Of a stretch of DNA of 64,000 nt, positions 41,051 through 64,000 are shown piece by piece; positions within the stretch are counted from its first letter, which is position 1; each line of letters begins with the position of its first letter. The position numbers and the translations under genes were made by a program. Origin of the DNA: Trichoplax adhaerens. Taxonomy: Eukaryota > Animalia > Placozoa. The stretch is taken from the NCBI RefSeq assembly GCF_000150275.1, contig NW_002060956.1, positions 124,001-188,000 on the forward strand, read 5' to 3'. The notes under the pieces are model-generated. The model was not told where the DNA came from, searched no databases, and saw nothing but the letters and a program-made list of their open reading frames with translations.

Positions 41051-43708
41051 AGATTAAGAACGTTATTAGACACGATGCTTTTTGATACTCATGACATATT
41101 CTGAAAAATGGTACAAATGATAAATAAATTTATGTTGCTAGTATGTAAGAAATAGGATTATAAAAGCTAATTACTTTTTGTGTATTGAAGTCCTTAGACA
41201 CTCTCCTTTTGGATATTCTTTATTATTTGCTAACCTTATTTACGTTATTACTTACTGAAATTTTCGTCCGGATCAATAATCTCTTGCGTGCTAATTTAAT
41301 TCAAATAATTTTGTAGCGCAGTAATTATAATGTGAATCTGTACCTTTGATACAGTATTATCATTGATGCTACGTATGCTCCTGAATCTATTGCCGCAAAT
41401 TCTATCCATCTTAGTAAGAAAAGGCCCAGAAAGTGTAGTAACGTATATCGTATGTTCTACCCTAGTTATCATATATCTGATCATAAAATTTGGAATAGCT
41501 ATGTAATAAAAATTATATCCGCACTTCCTAATTACTGAATATACTTAATAACAGTCAAATTCTATCCTTCTTTCTAACTGTAAACTAACTTTGACAGCTT
41601 TCGAGTATAATCGCGTCACCATTTTCGAGAAAGTTGTACTGTATGCTTTTACGAAACGTTCATGTCCGTTACTGTATTCCTTACCACTTAAAAGCTGCAA
41701 ATTACACATTTATAAGCGTTTCCGAATCTTCTCATCCTTCTGTATTAATCGTATAATGTACCAATCTCTCGCCTTATTGTATATTTATTAATCTCAGGAA
41801 ATAACCCGATATTCGAAAGTTGATCAAAATTACGGTACTTTTAGTAAAATACAAAATGACTAAGTTCGTTTAGAGCACTATTAGGGAAGTTTAAATGATG
41901 AAGTTTTGTATATAGACTTAGATAAGAGATATTGATCATTCAGTAGATATCGTAATTTATAAAAGCTATAGTGAATAGTAAAAAGGTCAAAATTGATCGA
42001 TAATTTGTTTCACTGATAGAAAGTACTGCGTTTGAAGTTCGTAACAGCTCGCTTTCAAATTTTTAGTCACCAATTTATTGCAATGGCTGCACCTCTAATC
42101 ATGTAATCCATGATAAGCCCCATACAGTCCTATAGTAAATATATTGATATAAATTATTAATAATAGGTCATTAATCGATTATAATTATTAACCTTGAGTT
42201 GCTATCCTTGCTTCCTTCACTGCATCATTGACCATATGATTGTAATTTATTTCTTAAAATTTCAACACATTATACCATTATTCCGCTATGTAGGGCGAAT
42301 TATTTGTGCCCTAACTTCCATATCTACTGAATCACTTCTTAGACTAATAGGTACCTGGCATGTACCCTATTAATTAATTAGCGTACAGTAGTTGTGGTGC
42401 CTTGAAATCAAAGATAGGCAATAAAATCTTTTAAACATTAAGCCAATTCAAACACTACTTCGATCTGACTTTGTCGTACTACATGTAGTAATTTATTGCT
42501 ACCATATTCGGAAGGTTAAATTGTCATAAACTTTAGGCGCCATTCTGAGGCTAGAAGGGAAATGCAGATGTCCAGTAAACTCAATGCTGTCCAAGTCTGT
42601 TCCGTAGTTATGCACAAAACGATTATTAATATGTAAGATACCGCAGTTTACCTAGAGATGTCAATCTGAAGCTTATTACACTACAGAATTTTATACCAGC
42701 GGCCTATTTACAACTATTCACCTGATTAGAATAAATCAGAAGTGAAGTATTGCTACTATGTACGTTTATGTGTAACTATGTAAATATTAGTAAGTATAAG
42801 AGTACATGATAGGTAAACAAAGTACAAATTAGTGATTTCATTGGATTAGTCATCTGCTGATACAGTGTTGCTTTTATTAATAAAGTAAGGTTAACTGTAG
42901 CATCAATTAAAAAAATAAAAAGTTGGATCATTCTTCCTTCACATTTTTATATACATAGAGCTAAACGCGTGATCCATCAGTATTACAAACACTGATACGA
43001 ATAGCATGGGTATAATTCATATTATATCCTGTGCATAAATGTTAGGACACTGAATAAGGTGTGTATGTGTTTTATTTCGTCTTACAGCCTAGGCAGATCA
43101 GTCAATTGCCATTGATGGTGCGGAAGTTATGCTATATCAGCTTGGATCATTGGCTACGTGATTGAACCTAATAAAAAGGTAAGCAACTCGTTCGTCCTTC
43201 ATCTGCAAACAATAGCTTCTAGAAGATAAAATTTTATTGATTTTAGGGTATCACAAGAGCGGAAAATTCTGTATACGAGTATGTTAAAGCAGTACACACA
43301 CGATGTGGTAACTACAATTATTGCAGTAAAGGTGCCAAATTGGCCAATCGTTCAAAGAAATTGATAAAATAGTTAATCTTTCCAAATTAAATTGCAGCGC
43401 CCTACTAGCCAAGAAGCCAGTTAAAATACATAACACAGCTACTGTAATTGTATTGTATGTAGCGTTGAATTACGCCCGAAAACTAAGTTATTTCCTTCTG
43501 TGATTAATTATGTACACAAATAATTGAAATCCATTTCACTCAGACATTTGAGTAACTCTGTTTCCAACACATACAATCAAAGATTTGTCAATTGCTATAC
43601 CGTATTAATAATATTATTATCATTGAATGAAATATAGAAACCAGCTCGGGATATAGAATAGTGCTACAGTATACCATGTTAGGTTTATGAAAATTCTCGA
43701 ATAATTGC

Positions 43709-46700
43709 TCAATTATCTTCACACTTCTTCAACCAGAAGTGTACTTTATCATCAATATAATGGCGAAAATGTCGCAGAACACATACACCAACCGAATTAT
43801 AGGATTCTTTTATTACCTAGAAAAATATTTGGGGCAATAAATAACCCGACAATAAGCGTGTTGTATGTGTATTTATTGCATCGCAATGAATAATGAGATT
43901 ACATCAATACTGTAAAGTATTGATAAAATTTAAATACTTACTTCAATCTCAAGTTCTATATCTTTTATTTTAAAAACCCCAGCGTACAGCTGCTTTTCTA
44001 CAGTAGAATGGACACCATGGCTTGTGACAGTTCTTATGATATTTAATCCAAGAATTTCAACTATTTCCGGTTGAAGTGTCACAACATCACTACCTGTGTC
44101 GATTAAAAATGATTTCTGAATGTACATGCTATCCTCTTCAGGTGATCCAACTGCTGCCTTGATGCATAAGAATTCGTGTTTAGCGTTACTTAAGGCCTCC
44201 GGTTTAATCCAACTCCCAACACCTAAAGGCTCTTCAGGCTCAGTAATCCGGACATTTCCTTCTTTTAACTTTTCAACTATAAACAGCGATGGTGACATCA
44301 AAGTGAAATCTTAATAGATGTAAACTATGTTATAACGATTTCTAGGATTATCAGATCACTATCTAACGAAAAATTCTGAACAAGTTAAAAAGCACAACTT
44401 GCGACATATTAAGTAAAGTCCGCTTAATAATAATCAATTAATGTTACGATATTTTCACCATATCACGGCATAGTAATTTCATACTGTAATATATTTCTTA
44501 CGATCTGTTGTGAAACAAATTTACGTTACACTTACTCATTCTTGCAATTCGCTTGCGATGACCTGGAATCATGATTTCCACTTCATCCATAAAATCATCT
44601 ACTTTAACTATTTGTTTACATTTACGGAGGCTGTCATAGCCTAATTGTACAATTTTAGAATGATACTTTTCTAATGCAAATTGGCGCAGCCAATGATATA
44701 CTTCACCAGAGCCACTCCTACAATATGTTTTAGCTGCATTTTGCAAGACAATTTTGGTTTGTAAATAAAGTGCATGGCAAATAATTTAAAAGAAATAAAA
44801 ACAGATTCTATTACGATTTACTCTATCAATATTACTCATAAAATATTTCTTCAAAAGAACTGAATAAAGTTTAATTTTTTCATAGTATCCGTTCAAATAC
44901 AGCTTTATTAACTAGTTATACATATCATAAATTAACCACGGTATAAAACAAATGGGTGTTAAGAATAATTAATTTATCGTCAATTGTATACATATAATGT
45001 GTATAAGTTAATCTATTTCAAGGAAAAATCGAAAGCTCGTGTAAATATCTCAAGTAGTGAAATTAAGAACTATCTAATCATCGTAATGTATATGCATACT
45101 TATAGAATTGCATGCATGATAAAGCTGATGTAGCTGTATAATTTCAATATGGTACGGATTACATCTCTTTAGGTGTAACCTGGCGTGATTTGATTATTCT
45201 ACTTAATGTATGTAATTCCAGTCTTATAGGTAATATTCTTATTTAACATCGATCAACACCAACTACTTGATAATCATCTATATACTGTTGTAATGTTATT
45301 TAATGGTATCATTTAAGACTATCTTGAATGCTTGTTTTATTTGATACAATTCTTATTTTTCTTATCCATAAGTACCCAATTATGCTTGTGATCTTTCATG
45401 TGCGTATACAAGTACTGTTCTAGTATCATGTTATTTTACAACTCAATGCAGTATCATCATTTTGAATGCTTATTTTATTTGATACGCTTGATATACGTAC
45501 TTTAGTCTACATTACTGTACGCTGTACTAAATATCATCGAGCGGTTCGCAAAGAGGCATGTCATCAACATTTCCATCTCCCATATTTCACAGTGTTAATC
45601 AGGTAGGTTCAGTGGTATTCTATTTTATGTACATCCACAGGTGTGCGCGTATTTCTACTTTTAAATTTTGCGGGTTTGCATGCTACTGTATATAACACAT
45701 CTTTGTGATTTGTAAAGGTTATTATCATACAGTATAGAGCTATTATGCGTATAATAAGGGAGGAGATCGTACAACATTAATATTCTGCTTTGGACAAGAA
45801 ACTAAGCAAATGCTCTTTGGCATGAGAATATTAGTTAAGAAACTGAGATCGGAAGAGTTGACAGGCAATGATTCTATCATACGGCAAAGTCGATAGAATC
45901 GCTGCCAATCAAGTAATGCATTTATTTTGATACTGTATTGAATGATAAGCACAACTAACTGAATTACTATAGGTAGCTTCTATCCTGCACAACAGAAAGT
46001 ATGGTAAACATTGGCCTTATCTCCATATGTCTATACTGAACGAATCCATTCGATCCGATTATACAGTATAATCATCCTGTAGTCATTAACAACAAATATC
46101 AGCTATTAGCAACATTAGACAAATACGAAGACTGAATGATAGGGCGCTAAGTACAGTAACAACGGAAAAAGGAAGCGCAAAGAATTTACACAAATAGAGA
46201 CTCTTTTCAGTTCTAGCTAGATCAAGGTGATCCTTTTAATAATATAAATAAAAAAATGGAAGACCGTAGTTGAACAGACTTAATGCAAGCTTTACTGTCT
46301 ACTTACACTAATAAACTATTAGGATGATGCATTATAAATTTGAGAAGCTACAAGTGATATGTGATTCAAAATGGTTATTGCCAAGGAGTGATTCATTCAC
46401 TATCCATGTATATAGTATGATTATTATACATCATCATATTCAGAACAATAAAAGAAAGATTCATATTTAAACAGCCTTTCAACTCGTCGGAGAAGCCAAA
46501 GCAAATCACAAGTCAATACTTGAATCATACCTATGGATTGATTAATGTATCATTTAACTAGAATGGCGGATAAAAAGTTACCGATGTGCATCATATTGAG
46601 TAGAACTACTCTACGTGTAGATAATAGCAGGTAGTTACGATAGTAACTTATTAAGATGAAAATGCTGACTGTCACTTTTATTGTAAAAACGGATTATTCT

Positions 46701-47083
46701 CTTGCGACTAGATAACCTGACCAATAAATAATGCCTGCACTGCGTGTCAGATAGGACAAGTGCCTACGCCTGCTCGTCATGGCACCAATTTCAAGAGTCA
46801 TTGAAATGAACTGCAAATGTAGTAGACTAGCTCTAAATTGAACCATCAAGGTAGCACCTTTAGGCATATTACAATTGTGTTACTCACCTGCAGCTAAAAT
46901 TTCACATCTATCAGTTGGATTTTTGATCTGCATTTGATCTAAATCGCTTTCATCTAGCATGCAAAGATCTTCTTCACAATCGTATCCTTGAGATTCAAAG
47001 CGGCTATGATAGCGATCATATAATCCAATGGGTTGTAACAACTTTTTAATGACCACGGTTGTAAATTCATCCCTACTGGACAT
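43709..47083 (-). CDS. Tandem SAM-domain + retropepsin-like (clan AA) aspartic protease, 278 aa, 4 exons: 47083-46888, 44733-44536, 44276-43942, 43816-43709
   Basis: The exons (196+198+335+108 = 837 nt) splice in frame at canonical GT-AG sites. SAM1: KKLLQPIGLYDRYHSRFESQGYDCEEDLCMLDESDLDQMQIKNPTDRCEILAA. SAM2: VYHWLRQFALEKYHSKIVQLGYDSL...IMIPGHRKRIARMI. Protease: FLIDTGSDVVTLQPEIVEILGL (DTG at 44100-44092) ... SVGVCVLRHFRHYID. Confidence 0.85.
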
Positions 47084-47136
47084 TTTAGCAGTACTTTTTG
47101 ATCAACTTGCATGCACAAAAATGAATGGATTGTTAT

Positions 47137-47295
47137 TGCCTTTGGTAATCGTTGATCAATCAATCAGTCGTCTGTTATTCGACGCGCAGATTGATCACTT
47201 TAATTGACAGTCTGGATGCCTTTAGTGATTGTTGATCAATCAAGCAATCGTCTCTTATTCGACGCCAAGATTGATCAGTGTAACAGACAGTCTGG
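47137..47295. repeat. Two 80-bp tandem repeats just upstream of the SAM-SAM-protease ATG
   Basis: TGCCTTT.GT.AT.GTTGATCAATCAA.CA.TCGTCT.TTATTCGACGC..AGATTGATCA...GACAGTCTGG at 47137 and 47217. Confidence 0.9.
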
Positions 47296-48037
47296 TTGGA
47301 AAATTGGAACTCTCGTAGTGATTAATCGATGAATAAAAGACTAATTATTTATATAACGCGACTGTACGATCTACCGGTATTAAGAATGATCTGATTGACG
47401 TCTTTTGAACTATTCAAGTATCCATTTTTCCATTGAAAGTTGCAGTATATCGAAGAAGAAAAGAGATGCTACTACATTCCACACTTGCAATGGAGACTGC
47501 TGGCATTTCCTCTTTTAAAGCGATATCGCGATCGCTTTAATATTGATTCTAAGCTGTTTTTATTTTCAAGCCAAATCAATGTGTCATACTGAGCAGGTTT
47601 AAGCTTGTCGGGTTGTCGTTGTCACTTGTCATTCGTCACCAATCATTTGAATGGTATGACTTGAGTCACAGGATACCAATTCCTACAATCGTCGTACTGT
47701 ACAGGACAGAACTGATGTGACGCACTCAGGAGTTATGAGTCATAACATGTACAGTCAAAGTATGAGAGATACTGTTGACTATAGACTAGAAACCTTTCGA
47801 TTCCTTTCACACTACAGTACAGTACACTGTAAGCGCTACAATGCACTGCACACTCAGTGAGTGCACAGTACAGTACAGTAGTACAGTACGTCACTGAACA
47901 GTGAATAAGTGGGACTCTCCGATTAATTCAATTCAATAAATTAACGTGTAGAAACATGATCACATCATCTTGAGATTTTCATTTATTCTTCCATCATCTG
48001 ACTTCAAGTCGTTGTCATTATTTTCTTTTTCTAAGAC

Positions 48038-49138
48038 GAGTCGATTGAGTAGTAAACGATTCCAACGACAGCCAAAATCGGACTACTGTATAACCTATCA
48101 TATTGGATAGTACTGTACCATGTTAATGTACATTGTAGCAGTAAAGTAGTGCGTCTCACACGCCTTACTCATCCTACTCAATCATTGAAGTGTTCAGTCA
48201 AAATCTGACCATAGCCTGTCATACCGTATTCTTCAATGTACAGTACTGAGTACTGTACTGTACTGTACATTGTACAGTAAATGTACACTTGAAGTGGTGC
48301 AGCGCGTACGCACTAACGACACTCGTCCTGTGGATGAGTCCGATTGAGTAGTAAACGATTCAAAACGACAGCCAAAATCGGACTATAGCCTATTCTATTG
48401 GACAGTACTGTACAGAATGTACGCTGTAGCAGTGAAGTAGTGCGTCTCAGACGCCTTACCCATCCTAGTCAATCATTGAAGTGTTCAGTCAAAATCTGAC
48501 TATAGCCTGTCATATTCTTCAATGTACAGTACTGAGTACTGTACTGTACTGTACTGTACATTGTACACGTGAAGTGGTGCAGCGCGTACGCACTAACGAC
48601 ACTCGTCCTGTGGATGAGTCCCATTGAGTAGTAAACGATTCAAAACGACAGCCAAAATCGGATTATAGCCTATTCTATTGGACAGTACTGTACAGAATGT
48701 ACGCTGTAGCAGTGAAGTAGTGCATCTCAGACGCCTTACCCATCCTAGTCAATCATTGAAGTGTTCAGTCAAAATTTGACTATAGCCTGTCATATTCTTC
48801 AATGTACAGTACTGAGTACTGTACTCTACTGTACAGTACATTGTACAAGTGAAGTGGTGCAGCACGTACGCACTAACGACACTCGTCCTGTGGATGAGTC
48901 CGATTGAGTAGTAAACGATTCAAAACGACAAGCAAATTCCGATTATAGCCTATCATATTGGACAGGAAATGATTCAAAACGACAGCCAAAATCGGACTAT
49001 AGCCTATTCTATTGGACAGTACTGTACAACGTAAATTGTAGCAGTGAAGTAGTGCGTCTCGCCTTACCCATCCTACTCAATCATTGAAGTGTTCAGTCAA
49101 AATCTAACCGTAGCCTAGCATACTGTACTGTTCAATGT
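48038..49138. repeat. Tandem array of 4 units of about 280 bp between the divergent SAM-SAM-protease and GMDS genes
   Basis: ATTGAGTAGTAAACGATTC at about 48044, 48343, 48623 and 48903 (periods 299/280/280), with high identity through the units. Copy 4 is rearranged and truncated. Confidence 0.95.

Positions 49139-60098: not shown

Positions 60099-64000
<3,902 letters not shown>

What the first reader, a model, noticed from the sequence alone, without database searches (positions are those of the whole stretch)
43709..47083. Intron-containing host gene encoding a tandem-SAM + retropepsin protease: candidate oligomerisation-activated cytosolic protease
Seen: three separate ORF-track fragments plus a fourth exon splice at canonical sites into one 278-aa ORF, SAM-SAM-protease. 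It has an intact FLIDTGS catalytic motif, a single protease lobe, no signal peptide or TM segment, and no flanking gag, RT or integrase sequence. Established: single-lobe clan AA (retropepsin-type) proteases such as HIV PR, Ddi1/DDI2, ASPRV1 and NRIP2/3 are active only as homodimers. SAM domains self-associate into head-to-tail polymers, and in SARM1 tandem SAMs form the ring that controls an enzymatic effector. Inference: SAM assembly could switch on the protease by forcing dimerisation, giving a caspase-like or SARM1-like signalling, immune or cell-death switch built from an aspartic protease. I do not recognise this architecture among characterised animal proteins. The spacing after the motif (DTGS..VTLQPEIVEILGL...SHGV...LYAGVFKI...SVGVCVLRHF) looks to me more like stand-alone prokaryotic clan AA proteases than LTR-retrotransposon proteases, so old lateral transfer or domestication is possible.
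Basis: partly seen in the sequence, partly recalled or inferred. Interest (0 to 1): 0.88.

Follow-up and report, generated by a model that had tools for sequence, protein, structure and literature searches.

The report
Ancient animal SAM-SAM aspartic protease gene
This is a real, expressed four-exon gene of the placozoan Trichoplax adhaerens that joins two SAM protein-binding domains to an HIV-protease-like half-enzyme, and it belongs to an unstudied family found from sponges to amphioxus but not seen in vertebrates, insects or nematodes.

Summary
RNA contigs show three GT..AG splices on the minus strand (46888|44733, 44536|44276, 43942|43816). They give an 837-nt, 278-codon reading frame from ATG 47083 to TGA 43709.

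- **Domains:** exons 1 and 2 each pass Pfam's SAM cut-off. Exons 3 and 4 carry a single-lobe retropepsin-like domain with DTGS (Asp191).
- **Genome:** Trichoplax adhaerens. The public model TRIADDRAFT_60127 (259 aa) has the same first three exons but a different, unconserved last exon.
- **Family:** relatives with the same SAM-SAM-protease layout occur in a sponge, cnidarians, molluscs, a brachiopod, nemerteans, an annelid, echinoderms, hemichordates and amphioxus. All are labelled uncharacterised or mis-named.
- **Conservation:** the catalytic Asp is kept in 51 of 51 sequences. Intron positions and phases are shared with a sponge and a brachiopod, and the tree follows animal phyla.
- **Fold:** an orthologue's domain folds confidently. 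It matches retropepsins best (Rickettsia APRc, Z 11.3) and is predicted to form a homodimer.
- **Context:** no reverse transcriptase or integrase lies nearby, and the gene is single-copy.

I found no paper on this family.

The parts
47084..47403 (-). 5' untranslated region (minimum extent); contains an 80-bp unit repeated twice (47137-47295)
   Evidence: RNA contig X10 record 6 runs 46888-47403 without a break; tandem repeat
46888..47083 (-). Exon 1 coding part: ATG at 47083, residues 1-65 plus the first base of codon 66; SAM domain 1 (about 46892-47044)
   Evidence: Translation; Pfam SAM_2 2.8e-5 and SAM_1 8.2e-5, both above cut-off; donor CAG|GTGAGT; joint 46888|44733 in RNA contigs
44734..46887 (-). 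Intron 1, 2154 nt, phase 1, GT..AG
   Evidence: Joint in X9 and X10; same phase and aligned place in Oscarella and Lingula orthologues
44536..44733 (-). Exon 2: residues 66-132 (split codons at both ends); SAM domain 2 (about 44540-44704) with a G-H-R-K-R helix-5 motif
   Evidence: Translation; Pfam SAM_1 2.1e-9; best solved relatives are Caskin-2, SHIP2/EphA2 and ANKS1B SAM domains at E 1e-9 to 1e-8
44277..44535 (-). Intron 2, 259 nt, phase 1, GT..AG
   Evidence: Joint 44536|44276 in X9 and X10; identical position and phase after H-R-K-R-x-x-x-x in Oscarella, Nematostella and Lingula
43942..44276 (-). Exon 3: residues 132-243; linker, conserved G-x-W-x-K-P strand and the N-terminal two thirds of the retropepsin-like domain
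   Evidence: Translation (in-frame part 43942-44274); Asp_protease_2 4.3e-4; aligns along the whole family; single copy in the genome
44089..44100 (-). Catalytic motif D-T-G-S (Asp191 of the 278-aa product)
   Evidence: Read directly from the sequence. In the family: Asp 51/51, S/T 51/51, Gly 47/51, Ser 51/51
43817..43941 (-). Intron 3, 125 nt, phase 0, GT..AG; splits the protease domain
   Evidence: Joint in X9 and X10 plus a matching loose end in X19; same place and phase in Oscarella, Lingula and a second placozoan scaffold L005
43709..43816 (-). Exon 4 coding part: residues 244-278 and stop TGA (43709-43711); C-terminal third of the protease domain (S-x-G ... R-H-F-R-H ... H-x-W-L)
   Evidence: Translation; aligns with the family's conserved C-terminus; 79% identical in another placozoan lineage, with the stop in the same place. 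Missing from the public model P0106
43244..43708 (-). 3' untranslated region (minimum extent)
   Evidence: RNA contig X9 record 13 is continuous from 43244 to 43812 and then spliced to 43938

Best explanation
The region is the Trichoplax adhaerens orthologue (public model TRIADDRAFT_60127, whose last exon is mis-called) of an old, vertically inherited and so far unstudied animal gene family.

Its 278-aa product has no signal peptide. It consists of two ANKS1/Caskin-type SAM domains, a short linker, and one retropepsin-type lobe with an intact D-T-G-S site.

Shown here: the splicing, the domain identities, the fold (on an orthologue), the conservation of the catalytic residues, strong purifying selection, and the absence of any transposon context.

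Inferred:
- The protein is an active intracellular aspartic endopeptidase that works as a homodimer, with one Asp from each chain as in all retropepsins.
- The SAM pair serves as its docking or assembly module. It either brings copies together or ties the enzyme to another SAM-bearing protein, and so decides where and when it cuts.

Substrates are unknown.
For: - **Splicing and expression:** RNA joints for all three introns.
- **SAM domains:** both above Pfam cut-offs. The nearest solved relatives are Caskin, ANKS1 and SHIP2/Eph SAM domains.
- **Family:** 71 representatives in an exhaustive search of 1.84 billion proteins. The match starts near residue 130-160 wherever the N-terminus is complete. 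Of the 31 relatives scanned, SAM_1 hits 27 and Asp_protease_2 hits 20.
- **Taxa:** named members come from Porifera, Placozoa, Cnidaria, Mollusca, Brachiopoda, Nemertea, Annelida, Echinodermata, Hemichordata and Cephalochordata.
- **Catalytic site:** Asp 51/51, D-[ST]-G-S nearly invariant.
- **Pfam threshold:** two orthologues exceed the Asp_protease_2 gathering score of 24.3 bits (Oscarella 26.3, Nematostella 24.8).
- **Fold:** AlphaFold2 model of the domain has pLDDT 89.8. Foldseek's top hits are retropepsins, with two-lobed pepsin-type enzymes (cathepsin D) further down. An independent all-against-all search gives APRc Z 11.3 with 112 residues aligned, retroviral proteases 9.0-9.5 and Ddi1 9.0.
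- **Dimer:** homodimer score 0.77 against a best control of 0.43. Runs agree in at least 84% of contacts, partner pLDDT is at least 85, and Asp58-Asp58 and the Ser/Gly loops touch. That mark was reached by 21 of 30 proteins solved as homodimers and 0 of 23 solved as single chains; on eukaryotes by 17 of 29 and 0 of 30.
- **Age:** intron positions and phases are shared with a sponge and a brachiopod. The tree follows animal phyla.
- **Selection:** dN/dS is 0.055 against a second placozoan lineage.
- **Context:** no reverse transcriptase or integrase nearby, and single-copy.
Against: - No enzymatic or cell-biological data exist for any family member.
- The fold and the dimer were predicted on orthologues, not on the Trichoplax sequence.
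- The dimer pass may reflect the predictor's memory of solved retropepsin dimers.
- Sequence similarity to any solved or curated protease is weak: PDB profile search E about 0.1, and the Trichoplax exon alone is below the Pfam cut-off.
- Placozoan copies lack two otherwise well-kept residues. The Gly of the I-G turn is K or R, and the Arg after S-x-G is missing.
- Four relatives have D-S-A-S instead of D-S-G-S.
- Nothing shows that the SAM domains self-associate.
Confidence: 0.72

Rival explanations
1. One reading: the protease lobe is inactive as a monomer, and head-to-tail SAM polymerisation is the on-switch. It forces dimerisation and gives a caspase-like or SARM1-like signalling, immune or death switch.
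For: Retropepsins need two chains (established knowledge). The tandem SAM pair is conserved in front of the protease in every complete family member. Tandem SAM relatives include Caskin, whose SAM pairs polymerise (own knowledge). SAM domain 1 is strongly acidic in all members (median net charge -7), as expected of one face of a head-to-tail contact.
Against: The protease domain alone is predicted to dimerise with confidence (0.77 against a best control of 0.43). Ddi1 and APRc dimerise without such help (own knowledge). SAM domain 2 is not generally basic (median -4), so simple charge pairing of SAM1 with SAM2 is not a family trait. ANKS1-type tandem SAMs can be closed, non-polymerising units that bind other proteins' SAM domains (own knowledge).
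Confidence: 0.2
2. The retropepsin-like lobe is a non-catalytic binding or dimerisation module (a pseudo-protease), and the protein is a SAM scaffold.
For: No activity is known. Four relatives carry D-S-A-S. The placozoan copies have lost two conserved structural residues. Sequence scores against curated protease models are marginal.
Against: The catalytic Asp is kept in 51 of 51 sequences, and the neighbouring S/T and Ser in 51 of 51, across lineages that separated before the Cambrian. dN/dS is 0.055 between placozoan lineages. The predicted dimer places the two Asp residues face to face.
Confidence: 0.12
3. The protease part is a remnant or recent domestication of an LTR retrotransposon or retroviral protease that happens to lie next to, or is mis-spliced to, a SAM gene.
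For: Retropepsin fold. Pfam's second-best family is gag-asp_proteas.
Against: RNA joins SAM and protease exons. There is no RVT_1 or rve match in the window, and the protease exon is single-copy. The same architecture, with the same introns, occurs in a sponge, cnidarians and bilaterians. There are no hits to transposon polyproteins among the 71 relatives.
Confidence: 0.02
4. A reading about origin, compatible with the main explanation: the protease lobe entered the animal stem lineage from a bacterial stand-alone clan AA protease and was fused to a tandem SAM module.
For: The best solved match is bacterial APRc, more than one Z unit above the retroviral and Ddi1 proteases. The best Pfam family is Asp_protease_2. 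All nearest ESM Atlas clusters, by features (0.94) and by shape (TM 0.73/0.80, rmsd 2.1 over 126 residues), are bacterial.
Against: The Atlas is dominated by bacterial metagenomes, and the tool warns that rows from another domain are no sign of transfer. There were no prokaryotic proteins among the real matches of the exhaustive search; two long bacterial-looking hits that match short stretches repeatedly were not followed up. The domain-only profile search found nothing between E 1e-11 and 0.1. Short, fast-evolving domains give unreliable deep trees.
Confidence: 0.15

Closest known systems
Bacterial stand-alone retropepsin-like proteases (Rickettsia conorii APRc, PDB 5c9b/5c9f; Pfam Asp_protease_2, PF13650)
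   Same: Single lobe of about 125 residues with a D-[ST]-G-[AS] site. Best structural match (Z 11.3, rmsd 2.7, 112 residues aligned). Best Pfam family. Nearest Atlas clusters.
   Different: Only about 15% sequence identity and no significant sequence match. To my knowledge APRc is a membrane-anchored bacterial protein. This family is animal, has no signal peptide or membrane segment, and always follows two SAM domains.
Retroviral and LTR-element proteases (HIV-1, HTLV-1, EIAV, FIV, XMRV, foamy virus)
   Same: Same fold and catalytic motif (Foldseek probability 1.0; Z 9.0-9.5). The predicted homodimer has the two Asp loops in contact.
   Different: Not part of a gag-pol polyprotein. No reverse transcriptase or integrase nearby, single-copy, with introns conserved across phyla. 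It has family-specific conserved residues: G-x-W-x-K-P before the barrel, S-x-G-V-H in the flap region, and R-H-F-R-H ... H-x-W-L at the end.
Ddi1/DDI2 (UBL-HDD-RVP-UBA; MEROPS A28)
   Same: A cellular, cytosolic, single-lobe retropepsin fused to protein-interaction domains. Structural match to the Ddi1 RVP domain at Z 9.0.
   Different: No UBL, HDD or UBA domain and no Pfam Asp_protease (PF09668) hit. The targeting module is a tandem SAM rather than ubiquitin-related domains.
ANKS1A/B (Odin, AIDA-1) and Caskin-1/2 tandem SAM modules
   Same: Two consecutive SAM domains. Exon 2 matches Caskin-2, ANKS1B and SHIP2/EphA2 SAM domains at E 1e-9 to 1e-8. The orthologue model matches tandem SAM structures at 24-27% identity. 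NCBI auto-names several orthologues 'ANKS1A-like'.
   Different: No ankyrin repeats, PTB, SH3 or CASK-binding parts. The relative placing of the two SAM domains in the model differs from Caskin (rmsd 9-11 over both domains). Here the effector is a protease.
SARM1 (ARM-SAM-SAM-TIR)
   Same: A tandem SAM pair placed next to an enzymatic effector. This is an analogy for assembly-controlled activity.
   Different: No ARM or TIR domain. No evidence here for a ring or any SAM oligomer. SARM1 did not appear among the top SAM matches.

Membership tests
Clan AA single-lobe aspartic proteases (retropepsin-like) | Catalytic hydrophobic-hydrophobic-D-[TS]-G-[AS] motif | tested here: met
   F-L-I-D-T-G-S at 44089-44100; Asp 51/51, [ST] 51/51, Gly 47/51 and Ser 51/51 in relatives
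Clan AA single-lobe aspartic proteases (retropepsin-like) | Retropepsin beta-barrel fold of one lobe | tested here: met
   Tested on orthologues that align residue for residue with exons 3-4: AlphaFold2 pLDDT 89.8; Foldseek top hits are retropepsins; VIA Z 11.3 to APRc and 9.0-9.5 to retroviral proteases.
Clan AA single-lobe aspartic proteases (retropepsin-like) | Homodimer with one catalytic Asp from each chain at the interface | tested here: inconclusive
   Prediction only: score 0.77 against a best control of 0.43, with Asp58-Asp58 and loop contacts. The tool warns that the pass may come from memory of solved retropepsin dimers.
Clan AA single-lobe aspartic proteases (retropepsin-like) | Score above the curated Pfam threshold (Asp_protease_2, 24.3 bits) | tested here: inconclusive
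   Trichoplax exon 3 alone scores 21.4 bits because the domain is split by intron 3. Orthologues from Oscarella (26.3) and Nematostella (24.8) pass; most others fall just below.
Clan AA single-lobe aspartic proteases (retropepsin-like) | Peptide-bond cleavage that depends on the Asp and is sensitive to pepstatin-type inhibitors | not testable with these tools
   Needs recombinant protein
SAM domain (PF00536 / PF07647), two copies | Profile match above the curated threshold and a five-helix bundle | tested here: met
   Exon 1: SAM_2 24.6 bits (cut-off 20.5) and SAM_1 23.3 (cut-off 23). Exon 2: SAM_1 38.1. The orthologue model shows two helical bundles at residues 4-60 and 66-125 with pLDDT above 90.
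Retroviral / LTR-retrotransposon protease | Encoded within or next to gag, reverse transcriptase and integrase; usually multi-copy | tested here: not met
   No RVT_1 or rve match in the window; protease exon single-copy; spliced to SAM exons
Ddi1/DDI2 family | UBL and helical HDD domains before the protease; Pfam PF09668 | tested here: not met
   Only SAM and Asp_protease_2 or gag-asp_proteas hits in the 31 relatives scanned and in 8 scanned at E up to 5
SARM1-like assembly-controlled enzymes | Tandem SAM ring or polymer that controls the effector domain | not tested
No SAM oligomer test was run.

The most novel reading that the evidence does not exclude
Animals ancestrally had a cytosolic signalling protease built from a retropepsin half-enzyme and a tandem SAM assembly module. 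SAM-mediated clustering, with itself or on a SAM-bearing receptor or scaffold, turns on cleavage, by analogy with proximity-activated caspases or SARM1. The system was lost in vertebrates, arthropods and nematodes, which would explain why it has gone unnoticed.
Probability: 0.2. Interest if true: 0.85.

Novelty: new variant of a known kind. Interest (0 to 1): 0.62.

Why it matters
Cellular retropepsin-type proteases are few (Ddi1/DDI2, ASPRV1, NRIP2/3 and domesticated gag-pol genes), and each has proved biologically interesting.

This is a further, sharply delimited family with its own architecture. It has been kept under strong selection since before sponges, placozoans, cnidarians and bilaterians split, yet it is labelled 'uncharacterized' or mis-named in every genome. 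It appears to be missing from the standard model animals.

It offers a tractable test of whether SAM assembly can control a dimer-dependent protease, in organisms with genetic tools (Nematostella, sea urchins, amphioxus, and now Trichoplax).

A practical result: the public Trichoplax model truncates the protease domain. That helps explain why domain databases list only SAM for it.

Tried and rejected
1. Sequence searches against solved structures gave nothing significant. Exon 3 alone returned only chance hits such as ribosomal protein L3. A domain-only family profile returned plasmepsin and foamy-virus protease at E 0.1-0.3. The fold assignment therefore rests on predicted structure and motif, not on sequence homology to a solved protease.
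2. The idea that an acidic SAM1 pairs with a basic SAM2 was dropped. It holds for Trichoplax (-7 and +5) but not for the family, where SAM2 has a median of -4.
3. Paper searches found nothing relevant. I searched for the locus tag, for SAM together with retropepsin, and for retroviral-like protease architectures.
4. A look for the gene number in the supplements of the placozoan cell atlas paper (PMC10580291) found only an unrelated string. Cell-type expression remains unknown.
5. Earlier notes of this scan hold nothing on this place. Two notes from other parts of the genome were unrelated.
6. A domain-only profile search for outgroups or stand-alone versions found only family members and fragments.
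7. The joined 278-aa model was not sent to any search, fold or complex tool. Exons were searched by reference, and the public model P0106 and orthologues served as proxies. In scripts, only orthologues' published exons were spliced, to locate their introns.
8. The public model's last exon (43171-43218) has no support in the contigs laid. An alternative isoform is not excluded, because the contig ends at 43244.
Full report
**What is in the sequence**

The window is AT-rich (about 30-40% G+C). It is part of a 105.6-Mb, 1414-contig assembly. The public protein that matches the gene is TRIADDRAFT_60127 of Trichoplax adhaerens, so the genome is that placozoan.

Between 47083 and 43709 on the minus strand lie four coding pieces. 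I derived splice sites from the sequence and then tested them with RNA.

**Splicing**

One search found 19 public runs that hold the stretch. I laid four of them on 43200-47500.

- Contigs of two RNA-seq runs (X9 and X10, same study) show three joints: 43942|43816, 44536|44276 and 46888|44733.
- All three are GT..AG on the minus strand (GTAAGT...CTAG, GTAAGT...ATAG, GTGAGT...GCAG).
- One 666-nt contig carries exons 4, 3 and 2 together.
- The exon 1-2 joint is seen with overhangs of only 25-30 nt, just under the tool's 31-letter rule. However, the public model uses the same junction, and orthologues have a phase-1 intron at the same aligned place.
- A third run from another study (X19) covers only exonic stretches. 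It has a loose end that reads into exon 4 at the exon 3 boundary.
- Introns are also partly covered in X9 and X10, which means pre-mRNA or some DNA in those libraries.

My first guess for the exon 3 acceptor (44309) was wrong. Contigs extend the 5' UTR to at least 47403 and the 3' UTR to at least 43244.

**Domains**

Searched exon by exon, exon 1 passes the SAM_2 and SAM_1 cut-offs and exon 2 passes SAM_1 (38.1 bits). Exon 3 hits Asp_protease_2 (E 4.3e-4, 21.4 bits against a cut-off of 24.3) and gag-asp_proteas. The shortfall is expected, because intron 3 cuts the domain.

The motif F-L-I-D-T-G-S is intact, with Asp191 at 44098-44100. No stretch is hydrophobic enough for a signal peptide or membrane helix (maximum 19-residue hydropathy 1.11).

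Exon 2's nearest solved relatives are the SAM domains of Caskin-2, SHIP2/EphA2 and ANKS1B (E 1e-9 to 1e-8). Exon 1's are SASH1, SAMSN1 and ANKS6.

**A conserved family**

An exhaustive HMMER scan of 1.84 billion representative proteins with exon 3 gave 71 matches. In proteins with a complete N-terminus the match begins near residue 130-160. Of the 31 relatives I scanned, 27 hit SAM_1 and 20 hit Asp_protease_2.

Name look-ups place members in these groups:

- a sponge (Oscarella);
- Trichoplax;
- sea anemones and octocorals (Nematostella, Actinia, Actinostola, Dendronephthya, Xenia);
- many molluscs, Lingula, two nemerteans and the annelid Ridgeia;
- echinoderms of four classes, three hemichordates and Branchiostoma.

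Every name is 'uncharacterized', 'hypothetical', or an automatic mis-naming (ANKS1A-like, ANP32E-like). No vertebrate, tunicate, arthropod or nematode member appeared; the only vertebrate hit was a true ANKS1A matched through its SAM domains. This absence is not proven.

A domain-only profile found nothing between E 1e-11 and 0.1, so the family is sharply set apart.

The four Trichoplax exons align along the whole family. Conserved features are:

- the catalytic Asp, 51 of 51;
- the following S/T, 51 of 51; Gly, 47 of 51; Ser, 51 of 51;
- family-specific positions: G-x-W-x-K-P before the barrel, S-x-G-V-H, L-Y, I-E-V, S-x-G, R-H-F-R-H and H-x-W-L.

**The public model is wrong at its end**

P0106 (259 aa) is identical to the RNA-supported product through residue 243. 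It then reads 16 unconserved residues from an exon at 43171-43218.

The RNA contigs instead splice exon 3 to 43816. That exon encodes the family's conserved C-terminal third of the protease.

A metagenomic scaffold from another placozoan lineage (L005) has the same two exons, the same intron place and a stop at the same position. Over exons 3 and 4, dN/dS is 0.055; synonymous sites are near saturation (pS 0.73), so the value is approximate.

**Age and inheritance**

I located introns in three orthologues by matching their published proteins to their loci.

- Oscarella has all three Trichoplax introns at the same aligned positions and phases (1, 1, 0).
- Lingula has the same three plus one more.
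- Nematostella has the second at exactly the same place, the first three codons away in a gapped region, and lacks the third.

A maximum-likelihood tree of 32 members recovers hemichordates, echinoderms, lophotrochozoans and molluscs (SH-aLRT 97 each). It groups most non-bilaterians, though Nematostella falls apart on a very long branch and the other non-bilaterian branches are also long.

The protease exon is single-copy in the genome. No RVT_1 or rve match lies in the window.

The gene is therefore an old, vertically inherited host gene. It is neither a transposon remnant nor a chance fusion.

**Fold**

The joined Trichoplax model could not be handed to the tools, so I folded orthologues.

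A 151-aa fragment that holds only the protease domain (P0006) gave pLDDT 89.8 with a 52-row alignment. Foldseek against the PDB returned retropepsins at the top: HIV-1, HTLV-1, XMRV, foamy virus, EIAV and Rickettsia APRc, at E about 1e-3, probability 1.0 and TM about 0.6 by target. Two-lobed pepsin-type enzymes such as cathepsin D came lower in the list.

An independent search of 48,161 chains ranked the matches as follows:

| Match | Z |
|---|---|
| APRc (rmsd 2.7, 112 residues aligned) | 11.3 |
| Bacteroides endopeptidase | 9.6 |
| EIAV, HTLV-1, SFV, FIV, HIV-1, XMRV proteases | 9.0-9.5 |
| Toxoplasma Ddi1 | 9.0 |
| Pepsin-type two-lobe enzymes | 7-8 |

The full-length Lingula protein folds as two SAM bundles, a long basic helix, the barrel and a disordered tail (pLDDT 87). 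It matches Caskin and Eph/SHIP2/Odin SAM pairs as well as retropepsins.

The nearest ESM Atlas clusters are all bacterial stand-alone clan AA proteases, by language-model features (0.94) and by shape (TM 0.73/0.80). That library is mostly bacterial, so this shows likeness and not descent.

**Dimer**

Two copies of the domain (P0006, residues 10-145) scored 0.77 (median of three runs) against a best control of 0.43. The runs agree in at least 84% of contacts and the partner pLDDT is at least 85.

That mark was reached by 21 of 30 proteins solved as homodimers and 0 of 23 solved as single chains. On eukaryotes the counts were 17 of 29 and 0 of 30. The tool warns that a pass may come from memory of solved relatives.

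The interface includes Asp58-Asp58, Ser59 and Gly60 of both chains and residues 118-133. This is the canonical retropepsin arrangement.

**How it most likely works**

Shown: a spliced, expressed, selected gene for a SAM-SAM-retropepsin protein with intact catalytic residues.

Inferred: it is an intracellular aspartic endopeptidase, active as a homodimer, and the SAM pair provides docking or assembly.

The domain's own predicted dimer makes a strict SAM-dependent switch less necessary, and I give that model about 0.2. A pseudo-protease reading is unlikely given the invariant Asp, and I give it about 0.12.

**Novelty**

The parts are known kinds. The combination and the family are not described in any paper I could find. 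Orthologues exist in public databases but only as unnamed predictions, with SAM as the sole precomputed Pfam domain.

I rate it a new variant of a known kind, with interest 0.62. It is a solid and surprising family with an open mechanism, but the high-interest part (an assembly-triggered protease switch) is unsupported so far.

Noticed in passing
window 43171-43218 (-): The last exon of the public model TRIADDRAFT_60127 (16 unconserved residues, then TAG) lies here, inside or just beyond the 3' UTR seen in RNA contigs. The contigs laid splice exon 3 to 43816 instead. It is either an annotation error or a rare alternative isoform that truncates the protease.
   Followed up: partly
window 48038-48965 and 47137-47295: A 280-bp unit repeated 3.2 times (92% matches) sits about 1 kb upstream of the gene's start codon. 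An 80-bp unit repeated twice lies inside its 5' UTR.
   Followed up: no
P0010, P0009 (sea anemones), P0054, P0070 (unnamed assemblies): Four relatives carry D-S-A-S or D-T-A-S instead of D-[ST]-G-S in the catalytic loop. They may be a paralogous branch with altered or lost activity.
   Followed up: no
window 44734-46887 (intron 1): RNA-library contigs cover much of the 2.1-kb first intron in pieces at lower depth. This means pre-mRNA, DNA carry-over or an unannotated transcript; it was not resolved.
   Followed up: no
P0021 (1387 aa) and P0051 (784 aa): Two long proteins outside the family match short stretches of exon 3 repeatedly (11 and 3 stretches). Pfam hits found in single members of that alignment were bacterial-type (MBG_3, TnpW, MgtT, PutA_1st) and probably belong to these two, though I did not assign them. 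The matches look like repeat-driven chance similarity.
   Followed up: no
window 60099-61511 (+): A 470-aa open frame very rich in Gln, Ser and Asn. It looks like a low-complexity exon of a neighbouring gene.
   Followed up: no
P0008 (148 aa): A fragment resembling the echinoderm members in which the stretch from the catalytic motif to S-R-G-V-H occurs twice in a row. This is probably an assembly or gene-model artefact.
   Followed up: no
family alignment A3, positions 88, 126, 129 and 136 of P0006: Four histidines (flap-region G-V-H, R-H-F-R-H and H-x-W-L) are kept in about two thirds to nearly all of the members. This is unusual for retropepsins and could mean pH sensing or metal binding.
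   Followed up: no
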